DNA from: Perkinsus chesapeaki ATCC PRA-425
Taxonomy: Eukaryota; Protista; Perkinsozoa
Direction of reading: 5' to 3'
NCBI GenBank assembly: GCA_013115145.1
Contig: JAAPAO010000021.1
Span: forward strand, 62,001 to 126,000
DNA length: 64,000 nucleotides
This document shows, piece by piece, positions 13,513-50,460 of this stretch. A program made the translations under genes and the position numbers. The notes under the pieces were generated by a model. It ran no database searches and was not told the origin of the DNA. It was given only the letters and a program-made list of their open reading frames with translations. The first letter of the stretch is position 1. Each line of letters begins with the position of its first letter.

Positions 13513-14067
13513 ATGCTGACCAACAAAGTGTTTCTTATCTATCTCGCCGCACTGGAAGGATTGTTCGCCGTGCGAGTTTCTAAGAGCAGGAAAAGGATCA
13601 ATAGAGGAAATGACAGCAATGGCGGTCCTATCAATAAGCGCGCCAGACGCGATGATAAATGGTCTACTGGCAATAGTGATGATAGCGATAATAATGTGGA
13701 CATGATTTCTGATGACTCTAATGATTCCTTGACCGGGGCGGCTTCATCTGGCAAGGTGAGCGTCTTGTTACAAGCGGCTTGTTAATATTTCGTTTCATGT
13801 GGGAATGTGGAAGCTGAAGCTGGTGCCTTAAAGGATATGGTGGATCCTCTTGTAGCGAGGAGGATATTGGCAATACGCCCTGAGAACGATGAGGGATGCG
13901 AAGCAATCGCGAATAGTGTTAGGAACCTGTTAACGCCATCGAATGCTCATAACATCATAACCACTCAATTCGCGCAGCTCCTTTGTTCGATTAACCGAGG
14001 AAGCATCTACGACAGCATCGAGATGTTCAATCCTGCGGGCTGGGACAATATAGAGTTTATATTATAG
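13513..14067 (+). CDS. Secreted-type protein with bipartite NLS-like motif, copy 1 (spliced)
   Basis: MLTNKVFLIYLAALEGLFA followed by RKR-x13-KRARR; donor AAG|gtgagc; next exon DMVDPLVARRILAIRPENDEGCEAIAN. Confidence 0.65.
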
Positions 14068-14811: not shown

Positions 14812-15655
14812 ATGCTCACTAACAAAGTGCTTCTCATCTGTCTCGTTGCACTGGAAGGACTGTTCGGCATGCATCTTTCAAGGAGCAGGAAAAGGCTGAA
14901 TGGCTGGAGTGACGATAATAACGATCATACCAATAAGCGTGCCAAACGCGATGATACAAAAGAAGTTAATAATGCATTCACATCGAGGAGGGAAGTTAAC
15001 GTGAATAATGTAGACATGATTTCCGATGACTCCAATGATGCATGGTCCGACGACAGTGATTCGTCCACCTCGGGTGCTGCTGGTGCTACTGTTGGAGGTG
15101 GTGGTGACGGCAATATACTTGTCATGTTTGCCTTTCTATGCAGCAACTCGGTGTAACTCTCAAAGCAGACGGACAATGCCTGCTCGAGCAGGATGAGTTC
15201 AAATGGGTGTATTACATCACCCCCCGCGGCTTCGTGGCTACCACTAGTCTAACTTGCCGCGATAAAGACCTATATTATTTCGCATTGTGAGTATGCTACT
15301 CTGCCGACAGCCGGTGTAGTTGGGTGTATTTTATTATTCTTCATTTCAGCAACAGGATCGACTACAGTACTGAAGCTGTGATGCGTGGTAGTACGATCGC
15401 TACGACTGGTTCCTTGGAAAGTACGAGGGACCCTCTTGTAGATCTGAGGATATCGGAGCCACCCCCTAAAAACGGTATGGAATGTCAGAAAGTCGCAGAT
15501 GGTGTTAAGCAACACCTTATGTCGAGGGATGGCTCGGTTGATATTACCTATCTCGAGTTCGCACGTTAGCTCTGTTCAGTCTATCAAGGAAACATCTTTG
15601 CTAGGATAAGTCGCTCCGATCTCGTTGACCTGCCGAATTTGGATATTACTACAAA
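14812..15655 (+). pseudogene. Paralog of the 13513 gene (copy 2) with in-frame TAG at 15567-15569; possibly truncated or pseudogene
   Basis: MLTNKVLLICLVALEGLFG, RKR-x13-KRAKR, NNVDMISDDSND. The downstream exon DPLVDLRI...FAR*LCSVYQGNIF aligns with copy 1 DPLVARRI...FAQLLCSINRGSIY. Confidence 0.55.
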
Positions 15656-15703: not shown

Positions 15704-16016
15704 TAGCCTTGAAGGGTGATATTGTGTTGTTAATGAATACGTTACAATGGCCGCCGGACAGACCAGTCCGGAGGCAGTATTGCTGCCTCTCTTGGCCAGC
15801 ACTTCTCTAGATGTTCTCCTTTTCGGTGGTGGAAGTATAGTAATATGTGTCGAATGTGAAGCAAATTATCCAACCGACAGGAGCTACCTTCGGTGGTGTC
15901 CTTGTATGAGACTCGTAGAAGCTCCTTGGCTGCAATAACTGCAGCTCCACGTATCACTTCCGCATTTAGAATGATCTACTCAGTCACTACAAATCTATTA
16001 TCCCTCCGACCCAACC

Positions 16017-19000
16017 ATGTCAGGATCTGTAGGCGACGGCAGTTCACGGGCATCCGAGCCCTTATCAAGTGAGCCTCCAGCAAGCCCACGGCCATCGTTG
16101 AGTGAGGTGGTGCCGTCGAGGTCGATGCCCTACAGAAGTAGTGAGAGTTGTATTACTTTTAACTCCAAAGAGTCTAGTAGGGTTGTCGACGCTACATCGA
16201 ATGGACAGGATGGAGGAGGATACCTTCGCCAGGAGATTGGACCATACTATAACTCGGCGGTGGGCAACATCAGCAGCCTACCGTGGCCTTGTCGGCTAAC
16301 TAATGGTTGTAGGCTGAGCGCAGCATGTATTCCCACCAATGATGGCAATCTGAGTCCAAGGTCCATGGCACAGCTTTCCTTCAAGATACGCACTATGAAT
16401 AGTACTCCCATGCTAGGATCGGGGTAGGACGACGGGAGGTGCCTTCACGGTTCATGCCAAACGTTACGAGTCTGTTTGTAGTGAGCGCCGTCTGGAGGCC
16501 TTATTTGGTCCCCCACCGGCACCGGTCAGTGTACATGGTAGTGATGCATTGTCCTTTGCGATATCACCGGCACCATCTGGAATTCTGATAAGCGGCCGGC
16601 CAGCTATAGGCCCTCCCTGTGTCCAAGATGAAGAGGATACTGTTAACAGACTCACCAAGAAGCACATCCCTCTGGTCGCCTTGGTAATCTACACTACATT
16701 CAATTCTGTCATCGACCCTACTCAGTTGCTATTCCTATCCCTCGGAGTGGTAATATTCGTATCGCTGTGGGAGCCTCACCATCCGAGGTCGGATGTCCAC
16801 CGTACCAAGCTGGAGAAGTACAATATGTTTATATCATCTCCAATGTCCTCGTACTTCCCTATCGACCTCTGTATCCATCGGACAGGTATGTTGTAAGCGA
16901 AGACCAGAACGTCACATTACCATTTGAAAGAGACGCCAGAGCTGTCGACATAAAGGTTGTGGCTAGCAAAGTAGAGTGAAGGCCATGTCACACGGTAGCT
17001 GCTTTGGGCAGGATGGGCCGCCATCCAGCGAAGTTCATGAGGGAGAGGCACCCGAGCTTTCTGGAAGGTTGTTGAGATGGCAACTGTGGTATGACCCGGC
17101 ACTTAGAGACGTCATTGCGGATAGTCACAAGAGGCAGCTCGCTGGTAGTTCAGCGGCGATCTTGCCGTGTGCACCGTGCAGCTGGTTAGGTGCGGAGGCA
17201 GAGAAGATGCTTTACGATAATTCTCTGCAACTGCATACCAATTTCGAGGCTGAGCTCTTCGAGAATGTGGACCTAGTAACTGACCTGTTAGCCCTATGTG
17301 GGAATGCAAAGCTAGGTGCCAATATTCAATGAGGAAAGTATATCCACTGGCGATGGTCGAGTGCCTTTAAAGCTACTCATTTGGGTTGATCGTGATGGAC
17401 CTCCAATATCGTTCCTCTTCGAGCCGCTCTTACTTGGCAATGTCGCTCGATATAGGGTTGTTATCGCGGGTGAGTTTTGGAGCGGGGATGGTTTGTCGAT
17501 AATATTGACGGTTCTCATATGCTTGGACGAAGCGTTCTGGAGTTGAACCTCTTGCGGATGTTTCCCTAGCCGTGGATGTCAGGCATTCTTTTCCTTGCCA
17601 CCTTCATCCTTATTATCACCGAGAAGATCCACAGAGTGTAGGTGGGAGTCCCGAGTAGGCGCTAAGCTGCATGTGGCTAGATACGCCACTTTCATTGGTT
17701 CTATGTTGGGATTATTTTTAATAGCTTTATTACATGAAGTGCCAGAATTAATGGATATAATGGCAATGGTGGATTTTGGTACACTTATGTTGTTATTTAG
17801 TATGATGGTTAATGTAATCTATTAATAACAATAATAACAACAACTCAATACATAATTATTATAATGACTATAGGTACACCTGTTGGCCTTAACTGGATTC
17901 TTCCAATATATAGCAGCTCGTATGGTTATTCTTGCCAAGGGACGGATATCCTTACTCTTCTTTCTCCTCACCATTTCAACTGGTGTAATCATTATCCGTG
18001 CGTCCACTTTACATATCCTTGCAATAAATAAAGAAACAAGATATCTGTCCTCTTTTCTGAGGAGTCCGTCTTGCTTCCTTGAATCCTAGTCTTGTCGGTC
18101 TTTTGCTCTGTATGTACATCCCTTGCATAGGTCCTTTCAGCCTTCCTAGATAACGTCACAACAGTTATGCTGGTGGGGCCTGTAACTATATCCCTCTGCA
18201 AGGAGATAAAGAGAAGTCCAGTACCATTCTATCTTTCGGAGACGCTTCTCGGTGCGTCCGAGCTTTCATGGCTTCTCTTGCACACTTTCGCGTATTCTCG
18301 GACGCTCCATAGGGTACGCTTCAAGCTAAGATGTTCTGTTCCTCAGCTACCATCGGTGGTACAGCGACCTTGATTGGAGATCCTCCTAACGTTGTCATTG
18401 GTTCCAAGCTTGGCATCTCCTTCACCGACTTCATCATGTGAGTATCCAGCACTATCACGGTTGGCCCTGCTCCATTTTGCCCCTAGCCAGTTACAACGGT
18501 CCTCTGGTTGTATTGCTCCTGCCGTCGGCGGCTGGGCTGCTCTACTTGCGGTTTAAATCTGAAGTCTCTGGCAAGGCGGTACTCGACGAAGAACGAATAA
18601 AGAAGGAGAATATCATTCACGATAAAGTATTTCTTCCTCAGCAATTCTTCGTGGTGCGATAGCGTATCTTTTAGGTCGCGTTTGCCCAGATCGGATCTTT
18701 ATTCATTGCCATTATCCTAGCACTATTCCTCTCACCAGTAGCCCGTCTTCTGCTTACTCCTATCCTTCCTGACTCTAAGGTACACGGCTATGAAGCTGCA
18801 TGGTTTACCCTCCTTGGAATGTATGTGGGATGTATCGTCCTATCACCTCATGACATTCATCGAGTTCTTGAAGCTGTCGAGTGGGACACCCTTATTTTCT
18901 TTGCTAGTCTCTTCGTTCTCGTAGAAGCAGTAAATGAGCTCGGTCTTATACGGTGAGCTTGGCCCGCTATGTACAGTAAGTGCTTCAATTTCTGCTGTTT

Positions 19001-19895
19001 ATTAGAGCACTAGGGGACCTCATCACCGATATTATTACGTCTGTTCCAATCTCTCATCGACTCTGGGTGTCACAATTGCTCATCCTGTGGGTCTCTGCCA
19101 TGGGCAGTGCCTTCCTAGAGAGCCTTCCGTAAGTTGGCGTCTCTCGGTGCTGTCACACTGTGGCTAGATACACCACCACAGTAGCCTACATCCTCATTAA
19201 TATTCAAGGGAAGTCAGATTTGGGTATACCAGTCGCTCCACTAGCGTACGCCCTGTCCGGTACAAGAGACTGATGTGCTCCTGATGCAAAAGGTGTCATT
19301 TTTAGTTGGTGCCTGTGTCGGTGGAATCGGCTCTATTATGGGAAGCAGCGCTAACCTTGTATGTATGGCTATATCTCAGAGGTGAAGCTCCAAGATTGCC
19401 TTCGTACTCCGATAGACTAGCTCGTGGAAGATACTCTACCGTAGACAACAACGACGATAAGAACTCCCCCGAGAAGGAAACGACTAAACTGGAAGCGGTT
19501 GATGAAAACAGGCCGGCCTATTCCTCAACGGGCGGCGTCGACGTCAATGAGATTCACCATATAGAGATAAACCGGACACTATTCGGCCATGGTCGGGCCG
19601 TTGCACTCTGACACCTCTCGACAGTATTTTCAGACGAAGTTGCGCCTGCTATAGTGGGAGCATCGCCCAGCCAAGAAGAGCTTGGTGTCCCGGCAAAGCG
19701 ACACCCAATAACTGAGTGCAACAATGTGGAGGCTAAGTGACGGCGAATGCTCCATCCCCGAGGGAATGCTCCCATCTCAGGCACTTCCTTCAATATGGTT
19801 TCCCTCTCCTTTTATGTCTTATGCTTATCTGTAGTGTGTATCAAGTCATAGTCTTCGAGGTCATCGGTGCCGCCAATGATATGCCCGACCACTAA
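16017..19895 (+). CDS. OCA2/P-protein-like (ArsB/NhaD/SLC13, IT superfamily) transporter, copy 1, many introns
   Basis: Motifs KIHRVYATFIGSMLG, VDFGTLMLLFSMMV, LDNVTTVMLVGPVT, ATLIGDPPNVVIGS, VEWDTLIFFASLF, GGIGSIMGSSANLV; ends HFLQYGFPLLL...ANDMPDH*. Confidence 0.88.
17678..17929 (+). repeat. 252-bp AT-rich tract identical to 21776-22027
   Basis: Direct base-by-base comparison; about 30% GC (76/252); includes a 60-nt intron of about 18% GC. Confidence 0.95.
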
Positions 19896-20160
19896 CTCAC
19901 CGGCTCCCTACTAGCCTAATAGAGACATTATCTCTCTGCTGTGCGTTTAGATTTGGGACTGTTAAGTACATGCTTCCGCTGGAAGGGGCAGTGAATGAAG
20001 CCAAAAGCAGCAGTAGCGCAACTGAACCATTATTCACAGTGAGAAATGTTACGCCTCGCATCATCCAACTGCTCCCGCTGGCGCCACGATCGTATCTTGA
20101 GTATTAGCTGATTGCGTTGCCAACTATCCCACAGCAGATGAAGGTGTTCAGTGACCGGCG

Positions 20161-23100
20161 ATGGCAGACTCCACCATCGGCGCGAGAGAGGGAAGGCGAC
20201 ACACCCCGGAACGCAGGGGATCGCTGGTGATGCCTTCGCAGCAGAATCTCCTTCAAAGGAGTAAATGCTTCATAGCGCCTTCTACTGTCATTACCTCGTC
20301 TGTAGGGCTATCAACTTTACACAGAATGGATAGGATGGATGAGAATACCTTCTCAAGGAGACTAGACCATACCATAGCTCGAAGGTCGAAGGAAAGCCCT
20401 ACCTCGGGCTACTGAAAACAATTCTCTGATTGAGCAGATTGAGCGCCAGCAACCTGCTGGACACAGCAGGGTCAGGACCACACATCGTTACAAGTCCCCA
20501 CTTTTCCCTTGGATCTCAGTACACAGGAAGGAACTACAACGAGTGATGTGGACGGGCTTGAGATAACAAATGAAGACTCTATCAATAGGCTCACCAAAAA
20601 GCACATACCTGGCGTGGCGCTGGTAAACCTGCTTATTACAACCTGCGTCTTATTCGCCGTCTTGAAGCAACTCATCCCACTGCCGCTTAGCCGCCATGAC
20701 GATATATTACCGTGTATTTCTCCTTTATTGTAGCTACTTATTATGGCGATGGCTGTGGTGGTGTTTGTAACGCTATGGAATCCCAACTATGCTAGGGAGG
20801 ATGTACACAGAACTAAGCTTAAGAAATACAACATGCACATCTCCTCCCTGATGTGAAGGGCATTCTCCCTTTCATCCATTCAACTCCAGCCAGGTTCGTT
20901 GTTAGTAAAGATTCCAATCTCACTTTGCCGGTTCACAAGAATCCGCGAGCACTGGATGTGAAGGTCGTCACTAGCAAGGTGGATGCCCTCATTGCCACGG
21001 TATAGTGACTTGTGAACCGTGCTGTAAGCTAGGATACGAATACGTTATGGAGCCACCTTGAAGAAGCCACTCTAATCGACGAGCTCCCTGAGGAGTCTGG
21101 TAGAACCCTCAACTGGCAGTTGTGGTATGACCCGGCGCTGGAGCTTCCTGCCTCCAACAAAAGGGCCTTGCTAGAAGGTGCTGTTAGATTTCCTGCTCTA
21201 TGATGTTAGCTTAGGACCGACAACAGAGACGCTGCTTTATAGCAACTCGTTGGCCTTGGCTACCAATGTCGAGGCGGAGTTCTATCAAAATGTTGATCTG
21301 GTAAGGCCGTGCCACACAGTTTGCCCACTAGCCAACGGCACGCTGGAACACTTCAACATGGTCTCTGTAATTCGTGGCTCAGTTTATTGCTATGCAAGGC
21401 TTATTACCCCAGCGTGCTCGGGCTTACCCACTCGAATAGGTGCCCATCTACAAAGATTATGGCATACCCACAGACCAAGACACTATACCGCTTAAATTCG
21501 TCATTTGGCTGGAGGGCGATGGCCTGCCTATATCGTTCTTCTTTGAAGCCCTTCCTCTCGGTAACGTTGCTCGGTACCGGGTATTGATCGCAGGTAGGAG
21601 AGGCATTGTGCTCGGGTCTGCAGTAGAAAGGATGTTGCAGGTATTCTTTTTGTGTGCACTTTCGCCCTTATTATCACCGAAAAGATGCACAGAGTGTAAG
21701 GGGAAATCCAGAACTACGAGTTCAGCCTTCTTTCATTACCCTCAGTTAGTGGCACTTGAGCGAGCTCGCGTTTTGTAGATACGCCACTTTCATTGGTTCT
21801 ATGTTGGGATTATTTTTAATAGCTTTATTACATGAAGTGCCAGAATTAATGGATATAATGGCAATGGTGGATTTTGGTACACTTATGTTGTTATTTAGTA
21901 TGATGGTTAATGTAATCTATTAATAACAATAATAACAACAACTCAATACATAATTATTATAATGACTATAGGTACACCTGTTGGCCTTAACTGGATTCTT
22001 CCAATATATAGCAGCTCGTATGGTTATCTATGCCAAGGGGAGGGTCTCTTTGCTCTTCTTCCTCCTTACAATATCATCTGGGGTACCAACACATCACCCG
22101 AACCATTCAATTGTGCTTGCTCTTGTGCAGCTCCTATCAGGATTTCTAGACAACGTCACAACCGTGATGTTAATAGGACCGGTTACTATATCCCTCTGCA
22201 AGGAGATAAAGAAGAGCCCAGTGGCATTTTACCTGGCTGAGACCTTCCTCGGTAACACACATTGAGCGTTATCAACTGTACAGTAGAGCCAATCAGCTAC
22301 TATGGGCGGAGCAACAACACTGATTGGTGATCCCTCCAACATCATCATAGGATCCAAACTAGGTATCTCTTTCACAGACTTCCTCGTGTAAGTTCACGAG
22401 GATGAGCTACTCGTTCGTAGCTCAAATCTCGAGCCCGACTTTGCAGATACAATGCTCCTTTGGTACTGATACTTCTGCCCATTGCAGCTTTCATTCTATA
22501 TACACGTTTTAAGTCGGAAGTATCGGGTATGGTGGAGTTGGATATTGAGAAAATGAAAAGGGAAAACATCATCCATGATAAAGTAACGCTTAGCAGTTCT
22601 CACTTGGGCTTACGCCGTTGCATTGTTGTTCAGGTAGCCTTCGCCCATGTAGCCTCCCTGTTTGCAGCGATTGTGCTCGCTCTATGCCTGTCCCCAGTGA
22701 GCAACCTGTCCATGGTCTACATTCAGTATTTCCTATCAGGTGCATGGCTTCGAGCCAGCCTGGTTCACCCTCATGAGTATGTACATCGGATGTATGATCA
22801 CATCCCCCCATGATTTCCATAAAGTCTTGGAAGCTGTCGAATGGGACACCCTAATTTTCTTCGCCAGCCTCTTTGTCTTTGTCGAAAGCATCAACGAATT
22901 GGGCCTTATTAGGTCCGTCATCAGCGCACCTACCACGGTCCTACATTCCTCTGGTCAGGGCTATTGGAGACGTCCTCACCAATATCATAACTTCTGTTCC
23001 CATTGAGCACAGGCTCTGGGTGGCGCAGCTGCTGATTCTGTGGGTCTCAGCCATTGGCAGTGCCTTCCTTGAAAGCTTACCGTAAGCCATACACAATAAG

Positions 23101-23900
23101 CGCAACAGCTTCTGCTCGTTGACACCGATAACTTTACTTCATCAAGGCAGTATAATATCAGATACACCACTACAGTTACGTACATTCTGGTGAACCTAAG
23201 AGGACAGAGTGATCTCGGCATACCCATAAAACCTCTGGCATTTGCTCTATCGGGTGAGGCAATCCTGGTCAGTTATGCTGTATCATACACCCTCAGTTGC
23301 GGCATGTACGGGAGGAATCGGCTCGATCATGGGCAGTAGCGCGAATCTCGTCTGCATGGCGATTTCTCAGAGGCAAGTGAAGTGCCTCCAGTTGTGTAAA
23401 TATCACGGAAGGGAAGGTATGCTGATGCCGATGAGGATGAAGCTAAGGCGGAGGCGGATAAGGCAGAAGACGATGAGAAATCTGTTCACTCCGTCACTCG
23501 TGGGGATGGTGTACAGCTTGTTCACCATAGCGCAATCAATCGTAGCCTTTTTGGCGAAGGTAAGCGTGGGCTCTGTAGAGGCACTGCCGCCATTGGAGAC
23601 CGCGCTTTTTGTGAGATTCCTTCTTTTTGACCGTAGCCCCTTCAGATGACAATCTGATGCCAGTGAGCCCTGGCGGCGATGAAGAGCACCCTCCCCAGCC
23701 TGCCGTAAAAAGGCACCCTATCGCTGAAGCTAGAGCTGTCGAGGCCAAGTACGCCTTGTTGTGGTTATGCTGCGTAATCTGTAAACAGGCACTTCCTTCA
23801 GTATGGTTTTCCCCTTCTAATGTGCCTTATGGTCATCTGTAGTTTATATCAAGTCATACTGTTCGAGTTCATCGGCGCCGCCAATGATATGCCGGCTTAA
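20161..23900 (+). CDS. OCA2/P-protein-like transporter, tandem copy 2
   Basis: Same motifs (GFLDNVTTV, TTLIGDPSNIIIGS, VEWDTLIFFASLF, GSSANLVCMAISQR) and matching intron positions where checked; ends ANDMPA*. Confidence 0.88.
21776..22027 (+). repeat. 252-bp AT-rich tract identical to 17678-17929
   Basis: Direct base-by-base comparison. Confidence 0.95.
23373..23416 (+). other. GC-AG intron (AG|GCAAGT)
   Basis: Same position and phase as the GT-AG intron 19382-19430 in paralog copy 1; splicing restores QR-YADADEDE. Confidence 0.75.
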
Positions 23901-32241: not shown

Positions 32242-32982
32242 CGATCATTCTCAGGAACCACTCCAGAAGGCTCCGGCGGACAGGACCATCAGGGAAAGCC
32301 GGTCCAATTTGCGCAGCAGGGAAGATAGTTCATTGTATAGTGCCGCGCAAGGCAGCGTTCCAGCGGTTTCACATGTATGGCCTAGGATACTGCTCTGCAT
32401 TGCGCTATCCCCTCTCAGATTTTCCGCCTGGTACCCACCAACGGTTCGTTGAGTATGCCGAGGATACCCATAGCGGTGTGGGAGCAGCGTCCAAGCGCTG
32501 AACAGCAGGCCCAAAACGTACGCGTGTGGCATTGCCCTCGCTCAAGGTTGGTCACCTCAGGCACATGATGGTTCACAGCAACGCAGCTTCGATCAAGTTT
32601 ATAGCTCCCCAAATAGGCCGCACAGACGGCCGGCGTCGGCTTTTGATATTAACCGGCGACAGATCCGCTAAGTCACTGCCTTCACGTGCCTCATGCGTAC
32701 GATAATGCTGCTTCCACAATGGTGTACAATTCACACGAAAGCAAGACCGTTTTTTGTCGAGTTACGAGTGGAGTGAAGAGCATTCAACCGTTACCGTGCT
32801 CGGCAAAAGCCTCCCAAGGGATGCATGATATAATTATCCTTGGCAAGGTTATTTACCAATCGTTTGTGCATTATTGGGCTTCGTTGCATTAATATTTCTA
32901 TTACCATGGCATTCACATTTTCATTATACGTATGTAGTAACGGTCGATAATACTGGATAACACAATACGATGTATGAGAAAC

Positions 32983-34866
32983 TTAGTCCTCTTCGTCGAG
33001 TTCTTGTAAAGTCTTCCCTATGTCGCTTCCCTGTGGCATGTCGGGCCATCCCAGCCTTGAAGGCATTGGGGATTGGGCTTGGCCTTCTATCAATGCTATC
33101 GAGGTGATGCCCATCGCTCGTGCCTTCGGGGCTCGATACTCTCGAAGAGGTCTATCCAAGCCACCCTAAGTCGACAACTCAAGCATCAACCTGCAAACCG
33201 CACCTTTACCCTCATTTGCTGCTGACCCGAATTGCTCAAATCCCAAAGCCGCACAACTCCGTCACTGCAAGCCGTGTAAAACGACCGCCTGTCGGCACCA
33301 AAAGCGCAGTCCCATACCCACCGTGGATGCCCATTAAAGCCGCATTGCCGCGCAAAACCGTCACTAGAAAGATCCGATGATCTTTAAACTAACACAGAAG
33401 TCCAACCTATGAGCTTGCCAGATTTGAGCTGTCCCATCGCTGCTGCACGTTGCCAAAAGCTTTGCTGGGCCCGGGGCGAACCGAACCTAACAGGGGGAAG
33501 TCACCTCGAAACCTGGTACGAAAATACCACAGTACTTTCAGTATGTACGCATCGTGCGCATCCAACACATTCAACGGCACCCAACTGCTAGACTCAACAT
33601 CGTCTTCGAAAGATTCCCCAAACTCAGACAGCCGATCCTGAACCAACGCCGCAAGCGTAAAGCAAATCCAGCGCCGTTAAAGGGATGACTTACGATAGTG
33701 GGCGTATCTTGGGGGCTAATCGACCCAGATTCCCCGCCAGCCGTACCCTCTGATGCGCTGCTCGTGGCCGGCGGTGTCGCTAACATTTATCGATTCCATC
33801 GGCGTTACCAGACGAGATACTCACCAGAATCAAGCCCTTTGAAACTCGCCAACGACTGCAATTCGGGAGTACGTGGTGGAGTGGCACTGCACTGCTCGCC
33901 GGATACTCGCCAAGGAAAACAGAAACCTTTGTGATTGGCGGCCACAACAGTGACATCGTCGTTGGAAGGGTCTGCGTATCTGCCTTCCCACATCCCCTCG
34001 GCCATGAAGGATTTGTTTTTACGTTGGGGCCACAGCAATGGACTTAATTGGGGAACCTCCGGAATCCGGAACCTCCGTCCACACCTACACGCACAAGCAC
34101 ACTATTATCTCACCAAGCCTCCAAGGTGTCTACCTGGTTGGCTGTCAGGTCCCATACGACAACCTGGCCACTGGCGTCACCACAAATGACTTCAGCTTGA
34201 TTAGGATGTAGCACCGCACAGTGGATCGCCCCACCGCCGCCGCCCTCCGCTTGTTGGTTTTTGAAACACCTGCGGTACTTCAGCCGTCCGAGCTTGGAGG
34301 CATGGCCGTACATTTGGAAGCTTTTCTCGTCCTCAGTTGGAGCTCGCCTATCCCAAATCTTGGCCGTGCCGTCCTCAGATGACGTAACAAACCACCTATC
34401 GTACCAGAGCTGCCCGCTGTCGCTGCCACAGCCTACTTGGCGTCCTCCTCAAAGCTCACACTCGTAACATTATCCCTATGTCCTCCCTCATAGCTCGTGT
34501 ACGGTGCTGATGTATACTCGCAGTCGAAGATGCGAACCCACGGGTTGCCGGCTGCCGCAACGAAGCGGCTATCAGGAGTGAGCTCGAGGCAGTTGACATG
34601 TCCGTCGATAACATTGCCGTACTGAGCAGCACCTGGTCACCAAACCGACCTGCGTGATCACCATTTTCACGGCTGTCCCTACCCATAGGCAAGCCGACAC
34701 CTTCAACCCCAGGGATCCTCGAGCCTGGTCCACCTATCGTCTTTATCATCTCTCCACTGAGAACATCGTAGAGCTTAATATCTTCACTGTAGCCCGCAGT
34801 AAGTAGCACTGATCCTCCTCCCCCTGACCCACTATAGCTGATGCCACCGACACCTATACTAGACAT
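32983..34866 (-). CDS. LST8: TOR complex subunit LST8 (WD40)
   Basis: VLLTAGYSEDIKLYD, SSEDGTAKIWDRR, IHCAVLHPNQAEVICGDASG, AHDAYILK/VRFAP..LLATCSSDGTAQIW, GHPRWVWDCAF all match LST8. Confidence 0.9.
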
Positions 34867-40645: not shown

Positions 40646-41368
40646 CCCCACACCTACTCAACCATGCTACTTTATCCAACAAGTTGCCTTTGAATGTTAA
40701 AAGCCGATGGGTTTTCCGAACACTTCTGGGCCTCGCTTCACAGAGTGTTCTTGACGGACGGACCAGTACTGTTTTGTTTAGTTAAGGCTGACACTAGCAA
40801 TAAACAGGCGCATGCTTGAAGACCGCCCAGCTCGACATCAAACTTGGGTTTTCGGGTTTCGAAAAGCTGCGAGGGAAATTGCCTCCTTGCTCGTTTTCCT
40901 TTTCAATTTCCATTGAGCACGATTGCTATTGTTTTACTATCGTGACAATAACAGTGTCCAGAACAATGACGTATCCTGTGGATCATGGACCAAGTCTATT
41001 AGACATTCTTACCACCATGAGAGTGACTCTACCTATTATCGATAGGAACGATTGCATATAGGTGAAGTACGAGGAGATTGATACTGAATGATGATGCCAC
41101 TTGACAATCAACATCGATCATACAGATAACACAAAGAATGATGTGGTGTGGATTTGGGAATAGTCACATGTGGCCATCTTCAACGAACGAAAGGAATTTA
41201 CTCTGCAATAGTCAGTTGGCCGCGCATTGGCCAAGTCACTACCATGACAGTGTGTACTCAATTCAACGTAACAGTAGAGCTGAAATGATACTCAATCCAA
41301 CTCAATTAAGGCATTCATATTGAAACGGAAATAACATCATGTTTAAAAAGTATTCTGTAGCATTCAAC

Positions 41369-43061
41369 TTACAATTGATCCAAACTATCCTTTAAACTAC
41401 GGATGAGATCATCGGCATCCTAAAACAAAATAATTACACAACCGAGTCAATGACGAGTATCTTACCTCGACCCCTACAGAGACTCGAATGAAACCATCAA
41501 CGATGCCAAGTCTTTGTCTGTCCTCGGGAAGCATGTTAGCATGTGTCATAACAGCACAGGCTGTAATGATAGACTCGGTGGCACCAAGATTCTCACACAG
41601 AGACCATGGACGCTGAAGGGCCAATGAAGAGATGGCGAGGAAGAGGAGCATCTACCTGGATGGAGTTCATAAGCTTAGTACCGGCATCGGAGCCTCCAAC
41701 GACATCAAACCAGAGCATGCCACCGTGAAGGTTATTCCTGAATAGCAGAGCTGACCTTAAATGGTGAATTGCGGGAGCATCGGTGATACCTGTGGAGCTT
41801 CTTGGCGAGCTCGTGCTGAGGGTGCGACTCGAGACCAGGATAGATGACGCGAGAGCATTTAGGATGGCCTTCGAGGAACTTGCAGATCTTCATGGCAGTT
41901 TCCGATTGGCGCTGAATCCTGACGGAAGGAATGGACGACCGGTCTACAGACAGCCGCGGCTCCTCACCGCAGTTCCATCGTTTTGACGGTCTGCATCTGA
42001 ATAAAGGCCACAAACGGTGACATGATATTGCCGTGCATGTTCTGGACAAACTTCATGCGCTGGCAAAGCTCCTTGGTACGGCAGGCCAGAGCACCACCTA
42101 CCAAATATGCTCGAGCTGTAGGACGAAAGCAACCCGGTCTGACCTGTGGTGATGTTGTGGCCGTCATAGTACTTGGTCGTAGACTGCAAAGTGACATCGG
42201 CACCGAAGTCCATCGGGCGGCAGATGACAGGAGTGGCAAACGTGCTGTCACAAACATGAACGATGCCCTTCTCCCGGCAAAGGGCCGATACTGCCTCGAG
42301 GTCGACCAGCCTTAATAGAGGGTTGGTCGGGGTCTCCGAGAATACCTACAAAAGTTTCGATGTACACATCAGACGGTACAGATTTTCCGTTACCATTTTG
42401 GTATTGGGTTTGATGGCCTTCTTGATGTTTTCAATATCAGTCATATCAACAAAGGAGAACTCCATTCCCAATGGGATGAACTGTTCTCGCATAATCCTAC
42501 ACACCGAAAACAACGGTCAGCTGTCGACAGCCACGGCTTCAAAGGCCTCCAATATCTACCTGTTGGTGCCACCGTAGCTGCACTCGGTAACAACAGCGTG
42601 ATCACCGGTCTTCATCAAGGCACACACTACAGTAGTGGTAGCAGCCATACCTGTACTGAAGATTACCAACTAGGTAATACGAGCTCTTACCGGTTCCGAA
42701 AGCAGCGGCGCCACCGGGAGCCTTCTCGAGCTCGGCGATCTTGGCCTCGTAGGCACTAACAGTTGGGTTGGAACTACGAGTGTAGCTGAAGCCCTGAAAG
42801 AAAGCAATGGCTTAAGAGTAAGGTAAGATTCTCGATGACCAACCTTGGCGAGGTACTTATCGACCGACTCTTGGACAAAAGTGGTAGATAGGAAAACTGG
42901 GGTGAGGATTGCTCCGGTTTCATTGTCAGGAGAGACAGCTGAGTGAACCTATTGAAGGATACCAGTCGAGGTCTATGTTGCAAGATTCCTACGAGCTCAG
43001 TTCCCATACCAAGGGGACCGGGGATCCACTCGCCAGCGACGGTCTTCTTATCAGAGGACAT
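41369..43061 (-). CDS. Cystathionine gamma-lyase / Cys-Met metabolism PLP enzyme
   Basis: [39 protein letters not shown] (PLP Lys), [31 protein letters not shown]. Exact substrate not determinable. Confidence 0.9.
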
Positions 43062-43173: not shown

Positions 43174-44885
43174 TTCAATCGAGCTAGCGCGCGCCCTAGT
43201 GATCGATTTTTTGATAGACTATCGAAGGCAGATGTACTCTCCGATGGAGGCCATCAGGTAGGCTCCGATCGGCTTCAAACTCCATCTGCTATCCGCGCTC
43301 TCCCTATGGGAAATGTCTTCACTAGGATTGGTCGGTATTCTCCTCTATCGACGGTTCATTTATATACGGTATTATTGGGATTTGTGTAGGGATGTGTCAA
43401 CAGCCTATGTTGGTCTGATGATGGTCAATTCCTCCTTACCGGTAGCGATGACAGACGTCTAGCTCTATGGAGGTTTGACAATCACGATTTCGACAGTGCT
43501 TCGGCTAAGCGACCAGTTCGCCTATTGGAGACCGGTGGGTCCAGCGGGGTGTCAGCAGCCTTCTCAAGTGGCCGGTCTCAGGGCACAGTCTCAATATCTT
43601 TCACGGTCGGTTCTTCCCGGGCAGCACATCGCTGATTGCCAGCTGCAGCCTTGACGCCTCCGTACGAGTTCACGACATCACCACTTCTACCAACATAGTG
43701 TGTAGCACCGCTCATCGGGAGAGGGTTAAAAAACTAGTAAGACTGCGTTCCGTACCCCACAGATCTCCACCATACCAAAGGTGCTGCCATGGGACTGCCC
43801 TTCCCTGGTGATATCCTGCAGCCACGATGGAACTATAAGGCAGATGGACATCAGAGATCCAGCATCATGCAAGAGCCCTGATGTAGGCGCCCCTGTGGGA
43901 CGGTGGGCTACACTGCGAGCTTCAGATACTGGCCAGTTGGAGCGAAGGCATCAATGGTATCAGCGGTGGGTGGAATCTTCGACCATATTCCTTACTAGCC
44001 GGTGGGGAGCGGCCGACACTTAGTGTGTATGATCGGCGGCGAATGCATGCGTTGCAGTGTGGTGACAGCACGGCCTCGCCGTGCGTGGTTGCCGAACTCC
44101 AAGGGCCCGACCCTGCTATATCCGATGCTGATTTGAAGGAGCTATGTGTTAGTGGTGTATGTTTATCCCAAAGTGGTAGAGTAGGTATTGGTTCATGGAT
44201 GAATGGTGAAGGTATATATGCATTTGATATTGATAATCCTAATAAACCTATTGGTCCACCATTTAAAGGACATGCTAACTCACGTACAGTTAAAGAAGTA
44301 TCATTTATTGGATTAAATCAAGAATATATTGCCAGTGGTAGCGATGATGGTAACTGGTTTGCATGGCGACTACATGGGCCTTCTCACTGTGAGCAAGCGG
44401 ACTCAGGGTCTCCGCCATCTCCTGTGGACTCACGGCTTGTCCATGTTGGTCTTGAGGCCGATCTCGAAGTGGTGAACTGTGTCCAGCAGCATCCCTCTCA
44501 GTGCTGTGTGGTCACCTCTGGCATCGAAGATGACATTAAAGTGTGGCGTCCTGAACGAGCTGTCACATTTCATCATCGCCGGCAGTCGGTGCGTGATGAT
44601 CCGAGACTGCGGCAGATAGTGACGGAGAATCTCAGCAGGACGGCTGACACTCAGGGGCTAAGTAACTTTATCCTTACCATTCTTCGTCGAAGATTCCCTC
44701 AAGCTCGCAACATCCAAAGGTTTGGCTCCACTGTAGTGTTTACGAGGTCACCGTCCTCATCGTCAGAGAGCAGTGACCCAGCTGTTGAGTCCAGCGATGC
44801 CAGCTTCACAGAGGCCATTTCCTTGGAGGTTCAATCGGCTCTCACTTCTACGGACCAGGAATCCCTCGATGATGATGACGACTGA
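43174..44885 (+). CDS. DCAF8/DCAF6-like WD40 protein, copy 1 (start unresolved)
   Basis: GGHQ/GCVNSLCWSDDG..GSDD, GHSLNIFHGRFFP, YDRRRM, FKGHANSRTVKEVSF, YIASGSDDG, VVNCVQQHP..VTSGIEDDIKVW. Confidence 0.85.
44151..44372 (+). repeat. 222-bp AT-rich coding tract, 218/222 identical to 45993-46214
   Basis: Direct comparison; about 36% GC, with nearly all silent third positions A/T. Confidence 0.95.
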
Positions 44886-45010: not shown

Positions 45011-46863
45011 ATGTCATTTTATGACCGGCATCAGTGCCGCCCCCGCCGCTACAACTGCCTCCCTGGGGGCTACCATCTTCTGGGGGCTCGAAGCCTCTCG
45101 GCGAACTGGCGCATGTATCCAGCCAGATTGAAACGAAGTGAGGTTGATCTCGACGCTCACGCAGTAAGTCCCGGTAGGGTTGGCGCCCCCTATCTCCCTT
45201 GGTCGATTGTTGACTCCCTTCAGGGCTGTGTCAACACCTTATGTTGGTCTGAGGATGGCCAGCTGCTGCTATCGGGCAGCGATGACACACATCTGATGCT
45301 ATGGCGATATAGCGATATTACGGCTCGAGAGGGACTAGGGGGAACATGTCGGCCGGCGGAGATCATTCACACAGGTCGGATAGGCATGGTTGGTAGTGGA
45401 GCTGGAGCAGCTTTGGGGAGCAGGTCATAGCAGCAACATATTTCACAGCCGGTTCTTCCCGGACCGATCATTCCTTGTGGCCAGCTGTAGCCTGGACGGC
45501 AGTGTGAAGGTCATTGACATCGAGAACGGTATAGTGCTGGAGACCAGCAGTGCCCACAAGGATATGGTCACCAAACTGGTACGCCCTCGCCTCGGCTTGA
45601 TCGACTTGTGCTTATCAGGTGATACCATGGGACAGTCCTCAGTTGGTCATATCGTGTAGTGCTGACTCTACCATACGGCAGTTTGACCTCAGAGCAGGAC
45701 CGTCATCGTCGGAAATCCTCTCCCGGTGGGCAGACTGGCGAGGCGGCATCAATGCTATCAGCGGTGGATGGGCCATGCGACCCTACTCGGTGAGATTACT
45801 ACCATTGCTTCCTTTAAAGAGAGTGCATTCTACCAGATCCTAGCTGGTGGAGATTGGCCTGTAGTGCAGCTGTATGATAGAAGGCGGATGGGGTTGGACG
45901 GTCGAGCTAGCCACTCAGCACCAGGGCCTCAGCCAGTGGTCAGCCTTCGGGGACCTGCTATGAGCAATAGTCGAACTGAAAGGCTAACAGTCAGTGGTGT
46001 ATGCCTATCCCAAAGTGGTAGAGTAGGTATTGGTTCATGGATGAATGGTGAAGGTATATATGCATTTGATATTGATAATCCTAATAAACCTATTGGTCCA
46101 CCATTTAAAGGACATGCCAACTCACGTACAGTTAAAGAAGTATCATTTATTGGATTAAATCAAGAATATGTTGCCAGTGGTAGCGATGATGGTAACTGGT
46201 TTGCATGGCGACTAAGGCAGGGACATTCCAGCATCGTCCAGGAGATGGCGTCCTGCGATGACCCCGACTCTGGGACGGTCGGCTTCCCTATCGACCCTCG
46301 ACTTTGCCATGTCGGTCTCAACGCGGATTCCGAGGTCGTCAACTGTGTACAGCAGCACCCCACTGACTTCTGCGTGGCCACCGCTGGCATCGACAACGAC
46401 ATCAAAATTTGGCGCCCTTCTGGGGATCGCTCCGTCCGACCAAGTGTCACTGATATCCGACGGATCTGCCGTGAGAACTCCCTCTTGGAGTTCGGCCGCA
46501 GCAGCAACAGCATAGCTTCAATGAGCGCAATGCTCCGTTTACTAGGTGAACAGCTTAGACGGAGCGAAGTTGATGATAGCAGTGAGGATGAGGCGGAGCT
46601 CGAAGCTCGGAGGCGACTCAGGGAACTGGTAATACTGGCAGTAGGGTTAGCAGCAGCAGTGGGGGGGTCTAATGCGTGTATTGATTCAGTTGACAAGTAT
46701 GGCGGGGGAACAATCCGACTCGGACGATGACATGGAAGATGAACTTCTGAGTGATGACGATGATGACGAGGATAACGAGCGACCGAATGATAGCGATGAT
46801 GAAGACTCACCGCCAGATCCGGCCAGGCGGCGACCACGTATGATCAGATGCCTCCAGCAGTGA
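45011..46863 (+). CDS. DCAF8-like WD40 protein, copy 2, predicted C-terminal CaaX (CLQQ)
   Basis: DAHA/GCVNTLCWSEDG, YDRRRM, GHANSRTVKEV, ATAGIDNDIKIW. An acidic tail ends RMIRCLQQ* after an inferred final intron. Confidence 0.85.
45993..46214 (+). repeat. 222-bp AT-rich coding tract, 218/222 identical to 44151-44372
   Basis: Direct comparison. Confidence 0.95.
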
Positions 46864-49215: not shown

Positions 49216-49502
49216 ATGCTGTTCGCTCGTTTCGGCGCCAGAGCTACCAGGGCCTTCTCTACCTACAAGTCTGCCCACCAGGAGACGCCGCTCACCTACT
49301 ACCGTGCCACTCAGCACGCCACATCATCCATTAATCATCGTTTGGCTTATGTCAATGCGTAAGCCTCAGCCAGCTGCCTTGTAGTGGTTATCATATCTTT
49401 CAGGGTGTTCGTTTTCTGGGTATGCGACTCGCTGAACGCTATGGTGGATTGGTAGGCCTCCAATGGAGGTTGTGGAAGATGATGAGCAGCAGCGATGGTT
49501 AA
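49216..49502 (+). CDS. Three-exon 74-aa microprotein with mitochondrial-presequence-like N-terminus
   Basis: Introns 49359-49384 (26 nt) and 49420-49455 (36 nt), both GT-AG and frame-consistent, give MLFARFGARATRAFSTYKSAHQETPLTYYRATQHATSSINHRLAYVNAGYHIFQGVRFLGLQWRLWKMMSSSDG*. Confidence 0.6.
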
Positions 49503-49635
49503 CAAACATGATAGTATCAGTTTTCAGTATTTTTGATTGGTTCGGTTTGTGTTGAGGCTTAAGGAGTAGGAGGAGGCCTCCACTTGCTTCTTTCAGAGTT
49601 TGTTTACTCATTATTATTACTACTTAACTATAACT

Positions 49636-50460
49636 ATGTCTGGTGCTGGTTCTATGATCGCTTTGGGCCCCTTCTTTGCAATCTGCCAAGGGTGCGGTGT
49701 GTCAATGCAGAAGGGCCTTCTATCACTCTTAAAACAAGTCGGTATCACCTACGGTCTCAATATCCTGGTCCGTTACAGCGTCAACGGTCTACTTCCCGAA
49801 GGCTTCTATGATTCCCTTCCGTGGGGCCCAGCTCTGGAGCTGATGCTTTATTGTTTAGATCTCCTGGGTATGGTGCAAATCATATTCTACTCTGACTGCC
49901 TTAAGAAAGGCTTTGAAGATGATGCTCGTCGAGCCCTAGCAGTTGGTGTCACATGGGCCACGGCCGAAGTAATCCGTTATAACTACAACTTCGGTCTCAC
50001 CCTCGAGATGCACCAGTCAAGGCTGGCCGTCTTTACCCCCTCCACCCTCATGAGCAATGTTGTCCTTGCCAGCGATGTGTGCTTGGCCACCGGCGTCTGG
50101 CTGGTGTACAAGTTCGGTCAGCGTCTGCTCCCCCTTCTGGTGGTGTTCCTGTCGGCCTTCTTCCTTCCTGGCCTGGCTATCGATCTTCGCAGTATCTATG
50201 GTATGAACCACTGGGATAACGAGTTCCTTGGTATTATGCTGGCGGCCGCCGCTGCGACATCTGTCTTCACCTACTGGGTGTGGGGCAAGTACTATCCAGA
50301 AGGCTCAGCTAAACAGGCTGAACTGGACGAGATAGCCGATGAGAAGCAAGAGAAGGAGGATGCTGCCAAGAAGGCTGAGAAGGACAAGTCCGGAAACATG
50401 GTCCCCGAGCGTCGTGGTAAAAAGGCCCGTGCTGCTGCCAGGAAGGCCAAGCACGACTAA
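49636..50460 (+). CDS. TMEM147: TMEM147-like multi-pass ER protein, intronless
   Basis: LDLLGMVQII, RALAVGVTWATAEVI, LMSNVVL and GVWLVYK parallel TMEM147 ADLIGL, AALGWATAELI, IDSNISL and QVWMITR. Confidence 0.7.
   Translation: MSGAGSMIALGPFFAICQGCGVSMQKGLLSLLKQVGITYGLNILVRYSVNGLLPEGFYDSLPWGPALELMLYCLDLLGMVQIIFYSDCLKKGFEDDARRALAVGVTWATAEVIRYNYNFGLTLEMHQSRLAVFTPSTLMSNVVLASDVCLATGVWLVYKFGQRLLPLLVVFLSAFFLPGLAIDLRSIYGMNHWDNEFLGIMLAAAAATSVFTYWVWGKYYPEGSAKQAELDEIADEKQEKEDAAKKAEKDKSGNMVPERRGKKARAAARKAKHD

What the first reader, a model, noticed from the sequence alone, without database searches (positions are those of the whole stretch)
17678..22027. Identical, AT-shifted 252-bp island shared by two otherwise diverged transporter paralogs
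Seen: 17678-17929 and 21776-22027 are base-for-base identical, while neighbouring exons differ at many silent sites and neighbouring introns are unalignable. The tract is about 30% GC against roughly 50% around it. Its core has no C-ending codons (TTA, ATA, GAT, GGT), CpG occurs only at its two edges, and it contains a 60-nt intron of about 18% GC. The left edge is exactly a 3' splice site, and because the intron is included the copying was DNA-level, not cDNA-mediated. Inference: repeated gene conversion keeps the tract homogeneous while a homology-linked process (RIP/MIP-like methylation-deamination, or AT-biased conversion) erodes GC. I know of no description of this for this lineage, though that is recall only.
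Basis: partly seen in the sequence, partly recalled or inferred. Interest (0 to 1): 0.85.

Follow-up and report, generated by a model that had tools for sequence, protein, structure and literature searches.

The report
AT-shifted gene-conversion island in paralogs
Two neighbouring transporter genes of the clam parasite Perkinsus chesapeaki keep one 252-letter stretch identical by copying from each other, and that stretch has drifted strongly towards A and T, the reverse of the usual pull towards G and C.

Summary
Window 17678-17929 and 21776-22027 are identical over 252 nt at 30% GC, against 51% for the window. Assembly graphs of two independent samples hold the tract at twice the flank depth, with all four junctions.

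The genes are tandem P-protein/CitMHS transporter paralogs of Perkinsus chesapeaki, 56% identical as proteins. The orthologous exon has GC3 0.63-0.82 in P. marinus and P. olseni, against 0.19 here. The enclosed intron is 18% GC against 51-76%. So the AT shift is most likely derived and species-specific.

A WD40 paralog pair in the same window (44151-44372 / 45993-46214) repeats the pattern: GC3 0.07-0.10 against 0.53-0.59 in the same exon. There the paralogs are 98-99% identical within each of three species, while the flanks group by ortholog. That is the signature of long-running interlocus gene conversion.

Inferred P. chesapeaki changes in the tracts are 39 S>W against 2 W>S. Of the 39, 32 are transitions and 7 transversions. 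They show no CpA or CpG preference, and RIP indices sit at background.

Gene conversion is supported. Classical RIP/MIP is not. AT-biased conversion and a recombination-linked S>W mutagenesis remain open.

The scan noted the same phenomenon before on other DNA of this genome; one follow-up (s1-230248) reached the same reading.

The parts
17678..17929 (+). Copy 1 of the identical AT-shifted tract, in transporter gene 1. It holds the last 3 nt of the upstream intron, exon A, a 60-nt intron and the first 56 nt of exon B.
   Evidence: 252/252 identical to copy 2, GC 0.302; present in the contigs of two samples at 2x depth.
21776..22027 (+). Copy 2 of the identical tract, in transporter gene 2.
17681..17813 (+). 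Exon A of gene 1, the AT-saturated core. The copy-2 equivalent is 21779-21911.
   Evidence: GC 0.31. GC3 0.19, against 0.63-0.82 in P. marinus and P. olseni.
17814..17873 (+). GT-AG intron inside the tract, 60 nt and 18% GC. The copy-2 equivalent is 21912-21971.
   Evidence: the orthologous intron sits at the same position but is 43-45 nt and 51-76% GC.
17874..17984 (+). Exon B of gene 1. Only its first 56 nt lie in the identical tract, and it is partly AT-shifted.
   Evidence: the annotated gene-1 protein P0152 skips this exon although it is intact.
15747..19892 (+). Transporter gene 1 (P-protein / CitMHS, PF03600; product P0152, 895 aa).
   Evidence: 77% aa identity to the P. olseni ortholog.
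20743..23897 (+). Transporter gene 2 (P0001, 643 aa), a diverged tandem paralog.
   Evidence: 56% aa identity to gene 1.
44151..44372 (+). Second case, copy 1: an AT-saturated homogenised tract in WD40 paralog W1.
   Evidence: GC3 0.07 against 0.53 downstream in the same exon.
45993..46214 (+). Second case, copy 2: the same tract in WD40 paralog W2.
   Evidence: 98.2% identical to W1; the 4 differences in this span, and a fifth at 44150, are all transitions. GC3 0.10 against 0.59.

Best explanation
The tract is an island of interlocus (ectopic) gene conversion between two old tandem transporter paralogs of Perkinsus chesapeaki.

Proposed mechanism:
1. DNA breaks in one copy are repaired from the neighbouring copy 4.1 kb away.
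2. This happens only where nucleotide homology survives, in the most conserved membrane-helix exons. The island is bounded on the left by a non-homologous intron.
3. The enclosed intron is carried along with the exons.
4. In this species the homogenisation carries a strong G/C-to-A/T bias, most likely in how heteroduplex mismatches are resolved (AT-biased gene conversion).
5. A/T variants therefore spread to both copies and G/C variants are erased.
6. Over time synonymous and intron sites saturate at A/T, and conservative amino-acid changes to AT-rich codons are also fixed.
7. As both copies converge on the same A/T states their identity rises, which should favour further conversion.

Shown: the identity, the DNA-level copying, that the tract is AT-shifted relative to both relatives (its polarity is inferred), the S>W excess, and conversion in relatives.

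Inferred: that the bias lies in repair or fixation rather than in mutation input, and that conversion recurred at the transporter pair.
For: - The tract is exactly identical, has abrupt edges and includes an intron.
- It is real and two-copy in reads of two studies.
- Gene 1 is orthologous to the P. olseni gene (77% aa), while gene 2 is only 56% identical to gene 1.
- The P. marinus tandem pair is 99-100% identical over about 470 bp at the same region.
- In the WD40 pair, paralogs are 98.2, 99.1 and 97.7% identical within three species in one tract, against 79-87% between species. Downstream proteins group by ortholog: 60-67% against 40-47%.
- The AT shift is confined to the tracts. Exon A has GC3 0.19 against 0.63-0.82 in orthologs, and the intron is 0.18 GC against 0.51-0.76. 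The WD40 tract has GC3 0.07-0.10 against 0.53-0.59, p about 1e-12.
- Inferred changes in the tracts are 39 S>W against 2 W>S. In non-converted control sequence they are 25 against 11, Fisher p = 0.0046.
- Both transitions and transversions go towards A/T. At four-fold sites, outgroup C corresponds to T 20 times and to A 14 times.
- There is no dinucleotide context.
- The transporter copies show no private mutations.
- Amino-acid shifts in the tracts are V>I three times, E>K, L>I, L>F and E>M.
- Across the window's paralog alignment blocks, identity and GC correlate at rho = -0.67, p = 0.023.
Against: - Bias in repair was not observed directly.
- The P. marinus transporter tract is homogenised but has normal GC, with GC3 0.62-0.67. 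Conversion alone therefore does not give the shift; a lineage-specific bias or much more time is needed.
- The centre of the WD40 tract is homogenised yet G/C-rich in P. marinus and P. olseni.
- In P. chesapeaki W1 carries 4 private S>W transitions against 0-1 in W2. This could mean a raised C>T mutation input.
- Polarity is inferred, not rooted: P. chesapeaki was taken from recall to be the outgroup of the three species, so a P. chesapeaki-specific difference could lie on either branch. Its direction rests on composition, and synonymous sites are saturated between the species.
- Only three paralog pairs in one 64-kb window were tested here.
Confidence: 0.45

Rival explanations
1. A repeat- or recombination-triggered cytosine-deamination hypermutation (RIP-like in the broad sense, or deamination of single-stranded repair intermediates) erodes G/C in the duplicated tract. 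Unbiased gene conversion then re-equalises the copies. Selection removes harmful hits.
For: - 32 of 39 S>W changes are transitions.
- All five W1/W2 differences are transitions, and four are private S>W changes of W1.
- Saturation is extreme, with GC3 0.07-0.19.
- The shift is limited to the near-identical segment.
- It is species-specific, as a gained enzyme would be.
- A review states that RIP-type use of deamination may exist outside fungi but is known only there.
Against: - There is no CpA or CpG preference, and RIP indices are at background.
- Transversions towards A/T are also enriched.
- C>T and G>A changes are interspersed, with no strand-coordinated clusters.
- The transporter copies have zero private differences over 252 nt.
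- The reading frames are intact, which heavy hypermutation in a mostly clonal organism would make unlikely.
- No candidate enzyme was examined.
Confidence: 0.33
2. The tract is conserved and AT-rich because selection acts on the nucleotide sequence itself, for example an RNA element, an intronic small RNA or a regulatory site. The identity of the copies is then purifying selection plus occasional conversion.
For: The ends of the WD40 tract are A/T-ending and nearly invariant at synonymous sites in all three species, although flanking synonymous sites are saturated.
Against: - No Rfam family matches the tract.
- The predicted fold is no better than shuffled sequence, z = -0.03.
- The transporter tract is G/C-normal in both other species, so the sequence is not conserved across the genus.
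- Unrelated gene families show the same shift.
- The intron is a low-complexity AAY-type run.
Confidence: 0.06
3. Both copies were overwritten by a third, AT-rich donor: another paralog, a divergent haplotype, or foreign DNA with AT-rich codon usage.
For: Sample S1 holds extra variant copies of exon A that are also AT-rich, with 6-8 clustered and mostly synonymous differences. More than two members of the tract family therefore exist in at least one sample.
Against: - In run X5 the tract has 2.06x flank depth and forms one contig, so no third identical copy is present.
- The peptide is 44/45 identical to that of P. olseni, and the intron position is shared, so any donor would be a Perkinsus gene.
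- The WD40 tract shares its A/T-rich ends with the other species by descent.
- A donor only moves the question of why it is AT-rich.
Confidence: 0.06
4. The identity is an assembly or polishing artefact.
For: Collapsed or cross-polished repeats can create false identity in draft assemblies.
Against: De Bruijn contigs of two independent studies reproduce the tract, its four junctions with no mismatch, and a 2x depth step exactly at its edges.
Confidence: 0.02

Closest known systems
Interlocus gene conversion / concerted evolution of tandem paralogs (for example long-lived conversion in mammalian gene pairs, PMC2720389)
   Same: A short tract is far more alike than its flanks. Paralogs group by species in the tract and by ortholog outside it. 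Non-coding sequence is carried along, and the process lasts across speciation.
   Different: Here the tract is driven to extreme A/T, with GC3 0.07-0.19 in a 51% GC genome. The homogenised tracts usually described are GC-enriched or neutral.
GC-biased gene conversion (gBGC; reviewed in papers cited)
   Same: A composition shift confined to recombining or converted DNA. It affects synonymous, intron and even amino-acid sites, and is independent of translation.
   Different: The polarity is reversed: 39 S>W against 2 W>S.
AT-biased gene conversion proposed for organelle genomes (yeast mitochondria, PMC7846184; plastids, PMC4524490)
   Same: Conversion-linked enrichment of A/T.
   Different: Those cases are organellar and genome-wide. 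This one is nuclear, between paralogs, in islands of 200-250 bp.
Repeat-induced point mutation (RIP) and MIP of fungi (PMC9246332, PMC3318451)
   Same: Duplicated DNA becomes AT-rich, mainly by C>T and G>A changes. The effect is limited to the duplicated segment.
   Different: There is no dinucleotide context and RIP indices are at background. Transversions are included, the copies stay identical and functional, and the lineage is an alveolate. No RID-type enzyme was examined.
AT-rich mammalian tandem gene arrays (PMC10463633)
   Same: Tandem paralogs are associated with AT bias.
   Different: There whole arrays and their isochores are AT-rich, which is ascribed to low allelic recombination and relaxed selection. 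Here only the converted tract is, with edges sharp to the base.

Membership tests
Interlocus gene conversion (concerted evolution) | A tract of much higher identity than the rest of the paralogs, with abrupt boundaries | tested here: met
   252/252 identical against 60-85% in the other exon blocks, with unalignable introns.
Interlocus gene conversion (concerted evolution) | Phylogenetic incongruence: paralogs group by species in the tract and by ortholog outside it | tested here: met
   WD40 pair: 98-99% identity within species against 79-87% between species in the tract. Downstream, orthologs are 60-67% identical and paralogs 40-47%. Transporter: gene 1 is 77% identical to the P. olseni ortholog and 56% to gene 2.
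Interlocus gene conversion (concerted evolution) | DNA-level transfer that includes non-coding sequence | tested here: met
   The 60-nt intron is identical in both copies.
GC-biased gene conversion | W>S excess and raised GC in converted tracts | tested here: not met
   S>W 39 against W>S 2. Tract GC3 is 0.07-0.19 against 0.5-0.6 in the flanks.
AT-biased gene conversion | S>W excess in converted relative to non-converted sequence of the same genes | tested here: met
   39:2 in the tracts against 25:11 in the control, Fisher p = 0.0046.
AT-biased gene conversion | Bias arises in the resolution of heteroduplex mismatches (transmission bias), not in mutation input | not testable with these tools
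   This needs tetrad-like or clonal-lineage data, or allelic conversion tracts.
RIP (fungal repeat-induced point mutation) | Only C>T / G>A transitions | tested here: not met
   7 of 39 S>W changes are transversions. At four-fold sites, outgroup C corresponds to A 14 times and to T 20 times. Saturation between the species weakens this test.
RIP (fungal repeat-induced point mutation) | Dinucleotide context (CpA in Neurospora) and shifted RIP indices | tested here: not met
   Context counts are CpT 5, CpA 5, CpG 3 and CpC 2. (CpA+TpG)/(ApC+GpT) is 1.21-1.33 against 1.26 for the window.
RIP (fungal repeat-induced point mutation) | RID/Masc1-type methyltransferase and a premeiotic stage | not tested
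   No query sequence was available from the tools, and a sexual cycle cannot be assessed here.
MIP / 5mC deamination | CpG-targeted loss and cytosine methylation of the repeat | tested here: inconclusive
   CpG observed/expected is 0.36-0.46 in the tracts against 0.77 for the window, but on only 2-3 CpG. Only 3 of 15 C>T changes are at CpG. Methylation was not measurable.
ArsB/NhaD-superfamily P-protein (CitMHS, PF03600) transporters | Pfam CitMHS domain and homology to P-protein / OCA2-like proteins | tested here: met
   The precomputed hit for P0001, P0152 and their relatives is PF03600. The P. marinus homologs are named pink-eyed dilution protein.

The most novel reading that the evidence does not exclude
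Perkinsus chesapeaki, an alveolate, has a homology-dependent mutational process that attacks duplicated DNA and converts G:C to A:T. It would be a functional analogue of fungal RIP that arose independently, with a different, context-free signature.
Probability: 0.2. Interest if true: 0.9.

Novelty: new variant of a known kind. Interest (0 to 1): 0.72.

Why it matters
Where gene conversion leaves a composition bias in eukaryotic nuclear genomes, the bias is generally described as towards G/C. That gBGC model underlies much of how base composition, codon usage and false signals of selection are interpreted.

Here a nuclear genome shows homogenised paralog tracts that go the other way, to near-zero GC3. 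The edges are sharp, and two sister species provide contrasts at the same loci. This gives a natural system for asking what sets the polarity of conversion bias: the mismatch-repair repertoire, or a deaminase or methylation system.

It also bears on Perkinsus work in practice. Such tracts mimic foreign DNA or codon-usage outliers. They distort paralog phylogenies and collapse in short-read assemblies.

If the cause proves to be repeat-triggered mutation, it would be the first RIP-like system outside fungi.

Tried and rejected
- Assembly artefact: rejected by the contig graphs of two studies.
- RNA element or intronic small RNA: no Rfam family in the tract, and the fold z-score is -0.03.
- Resection-type strand-coordinated deamination (C>T on one side, G>A on the other): the changes are interspersed.
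- Classical RIP indices and CpG targeting: at background or inconclusive.
- Search for the extra exon-A variant seen in sample S1, by protein with the exon ORF: no candidate.
- The same search by DNA pattern in JGI metagenomes: no match.
- tblastn with default settings missed the short exons. An exact-match chaining script replaced it.
- Literature searches for Perkinsus plus gene conversion, AT-biased conversion between paralogs, RIP outside fungi, and Perkinsus DNA methylation found no description of this phenomenon.
- A rate comparison to separate biased conversion from hypermutation was considered and dropped, because synonymous sites between the species are saturated.
Full report
**1. The observation**

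Window 17678-17929 and 21776-22027 are identical at all 252 positions, and the identity does not extend one base further on either side. The tract is 30.2% GC. The window is 51% GC and the flanks 48-51%. The two copies are the two lowest-GC 150-nt spots of the whole window, at 0.24 against a first percentile of 0.35.

The other alignable blocks of the two genes are 60-85% identical, and the neighbouring introns do not align. At that background identity, 252 straight matches cannot be chance.

The tract consists of:
- the last three bases (TAG) of the upstream intron;
- a 133-nt exon, 17681-17813;
- a GT-AG intron of 60 nt at 18% GC, 17814-17873;
- the first 56 nt of the next exon.

From codon 6 to codon 45 no codon ends in C. 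CpG occurs only at 17684 and 17919. With about 5.5 CpG expected, that count is not significant by itself.

**2. It is real in the reads**

Contigs of four public runs were laid on 17000-22600.

- In run X5 (sample S2) one 252-nt contig equals the tract and has depth 161.6. The three flanking contigs have 75.6-78.5, run exactly 30 nt (k-1) into the tract at all four junctions, and carry no mismatch. This is what a true two-copy repeat looks like in a de Bruijn graph.
- Runs X1 and X3 (sample S1, another study) hold the same junctions.
- An assembly or polishing artefact is therefore excluded, short of long-read confirmation.

**3. The genes and the organism**

An exon query retrieved a 643-aa protein, P0001, of Perkinsus chesapeaki. 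Its exons map exactly onto 20743-23897. A second protein of the same contig, P0152 (895 aa), maps onto 15747-19892.

Both carry PF03600 (CitMHS). Their P. marinus homologs are named pink-eyed dilution (P) protein. The two proteins are 56% identical. Gene 1 is 77% identical to the P. olseni protein P0151, so gene 2 is an old or fast-evolving paralog.

**4. The AT shift is specific to P. chesapeaki and most likely derived**

The orthologous DNA was fetched for P. marinus (L001, two tandem copies) and P. olseni (L002, L003) and aligned.

| Feature | P. chesapeaki | P. marinus | P. olseni |
|---|---|---|---|
| Exon A GC3 | 0.19 | 0.63-0.66 | 0.82 |
| Enclosed intron length | 60 nt | 43 nt | 45 nt |
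| Enclosed intron GC | 0.18 | 0.51-0.54 | 0.76 |

The exon values are and the intron values. The intron lies at the same position in all three species. All other introns of the two P. chesapeaki genes are 37-61% GC, and all their other exons have GC3 0.35-0.67.

Because an intron is shifted as much as the codons, selection on translation is not the cause.

**5. Gene conversion**

- In P. marinus the two tandem copies are 99-100% identical over about 470 bp at the same region, while their flanks fall to 40-80%.
- The window holds a second pair, 44151-44372 and 45993-46214. It lies in two tandem WD40 paralogs, is 98.2% identical and is again among the lowest-GC spots.
- Orthologous pairs were fetched from P. 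marinus (L004) and P. olseni (L005).
- In that 222-nt tract the paralogs are 98.2, 99.1 and 97.7% identical within each species, but 79-87% identical between species.
- Downstream in the same exon, orthologs are 60-67% identical as protein and paralogs only 40-47%.

The duplication therefore predates the species, and one tract has been homogenised independently in each. This is the classical signature of long-running interlocus conversion. In both P. chesapeaki cases the left edge of the tract is a 3' splice site, where homology ends.

**6. Size and direction of the shift**

GC3 of the WD40 tract against the rest of the same exon:

| Species | Tract | Downstream | Fisher p |
|---|---|---|---|
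| P. chesapeaki | 0.07-0.10 | 0.53-0.59 | about 1e-12 |
| P. marinus | 0.37 | 0.49-0.53 | 0.031 and 0.12 (W1, W2) |
| P. olseni | 0.46-0.49 | 0.60-0.66 | 0.12 and 0.0039 (W1, W2) |

I counted sites where all outgroup copies agree and P. chesapeaki differs. In the tracts there are 39 S>W changes (32 transitions, 7 transversions), 2 W>S and 4 others. At conserved-residue codons of the non-converted downstream sequence there are 25 S>W and 11 W>S. Fisher's p is 0.0046.

The five W1/W2 differences in P. chesapeaki, four inside 44151-44372 and one at 44150, are all transitions. Four of them are S>W changes private to W1, judged against the other species.

Amino-acid replacements specific to P. chesapeaki in the tracts go mostly to AT-rich codons: V>I three times, E>K, L>I, L>F and E>M.

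Across all 11 paralogous alignment blocks of the window, identity and GC are negatively correlated (rho = -0.67, p = 0.023). The three blocks above 90% identity are the three most AT-rich.

**7. Tests of RIP and MIP**

- The C>T changes, counted on both strands, sit at CpT 5, CpA 5, CpG 3 and CpC 2.
- TpA/ApT is 0.82-0.97 in the tracts against 0.81 for the window. (CpA+TpG)/(ApC+GpT) is 1.21-1.33 against 1.26. Both indices are at background.
- CpG observed/expected is lower in the tracts (0.36-0.46 against 0.77), but this rests on 2-3 CpG.
- Transversions towards A/T are also common. At four-fold sites, outgroup C corresponds to T 20 times and to A 14 times.
- C>T and G>A changes are interspersed along both tracts, so there is no strand-coordinated pattern.
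- The transporter copies carry no private mutation.

Classical RIP and CpG-methylation deamination are therefore not supported. A context-free deamination cannot be excluded.

**8. Other readings**

- No Rfam family matches the tract, and its predicted fold is no better than shuffled sequence.
- A foreign or third donor is unlikely. In X5 the depth is exactly two copies. The peptide is 44/45 identical to that of P. olseni. The intron position is shared. The WD40 tract shares its ends with the other species by descent.

**9. Mechanism**

The best-supported account has two parts:
- ectopic gene conversion between tandem paralogs, limited to the segment where homology persists;
- in P. chesapeaki, a strong S>W bias tied to that process.

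AT-biased resolution of mismatches explains several features:
- the inclusion of transversions;
- the absence of sequence context;
- the intact reading frames;
- the perfect identity of the copies.

A raised C>T input (RIP-like in the broad sense) explains two features:
- the dominance of transitions;
- the private changes in W1.

Either way the effect is lineage-specific. The P. marinus transporter tract is homogenised without any shift, and the centre of the WD40 tract is G/C-rich in the two other species. P. chesapeaki also shows a milder S>W excess outside the tracts (25:11) and the lowest GC3 of the three species at these loci.

**10. Comparison with what is known, and novelty**

Concerted evolution is ordinary. 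Its polarity here is not. Interlocus and allelic conversion in eukaryotic nuclei is described as GC-biased, AT-biased conversion has been proposed mainly for organelles, and RIP is listed as fungal only.

My literature searches found no description for Perkinsus. Absence from the held library is not proof.

The scan's own earlier notes record the same pattern on other DNA of this genome, and one follow-up (s1-230248) reached the same reading. These are unchecked leads. Apart from the WD40 pair, I did not test them.

**11. Unexplained and limits**

- In sample S1 the exon-A part of the tract also occurs as bubble contigs with 6-8 clustered, mostly synonymous differences. The summed depth is about 3.4-4 times single copy, while the right part of the tract stays at 2 times. 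One or two further copies, or a divergent haplotype of the pair, must exist there. Two searches failed to locate them.
- Polarity is inferred, not rooted. I took P. chesapeaki to be the outgroup of the three species from recall, so a P. chesapeaki-specific difference could lie on either branch. Its direction rests on composition: the P. chesapeaki values are far outside the range of its own genes. Synonymous sites are also saturated between the species.
- No RNA evidence was obtained, because no contig of the one RNA run laid (X6) mapped here.
- Only one 64-kb window and five fetched loci were analysed.

Noticed in passing
window 44151-44372 and 45993-46214: A second AT-saturated, 98.2%-identical tract, in two tandem WD40 paralogs. 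The same tract is homogenised within P. marinus and within P. olseni too. Its two ends are A/T-ending and almost invariant at synonymous sites in all three species, while its centre is G/C-rich in the two relatives.
   Followed up: yes
window 21794-21915 (runs X1, X3 of sample S1): Extra 127-nt variant contigs of exon A carry 6-8 clustered, mostly synonymous differences plus one Ala>Gly change. Summed depth is about 3.4-4x single copy. This implies further copies or a divergent haplotype of the AT-rich exon in that sample.
   Followed up: partly
window 13690-13725 and 15004-15039: A third small case, in the tandem pair upstream. A 36-nt block is 92% identical at GC 0.31-0.33, all three differences are transitions, and the surrounding paralog sequence is about 78% identical or unalignable.
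   Followed up: partly
L001:2100-2570 and L001:6390-6860 (P. marinus GG673921.1): The P. marinus tandem transporter copies are 99-100% identical over about 470 bp at the region orthologous to the tract, introns included, with normal GC (0.45-0.59).
   Followed up: yes
L002:7634-7924 (P. olseni): In P. olseni the orthologous exons and intron are the most G/C-rich part of the gene: GC3 0.82 and 0.78, intron 0.76, against about 0.63 and 0.55 elsewhere. This is the opposite of P. chesapeaki.
   Followed up: no
window 17874-17984: The public gene model of gene 1 (P0152) skips this intact exon, which gene 2's model includes. Both proteins are named 'protein kinase' in the source, although they are CitMHS/P-protein transporters.
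   Followed up: partly
window 32805-33021, 41224-41480, 49495-49644: Three further low-GC spots (0.31-0.35) have no copy inside the window. Whether they have near-identical copies elsewhere in the genome is unknown.
   Followed up: no
window 18026-18080 (- strand): A weak Rfam match to Plastid-psbA-3 scores 29.8 bits against a gathering score of 48.4 (E = 0.015). It lies inside an intron of gene 1 and is most likely chance.
   Followed up: no
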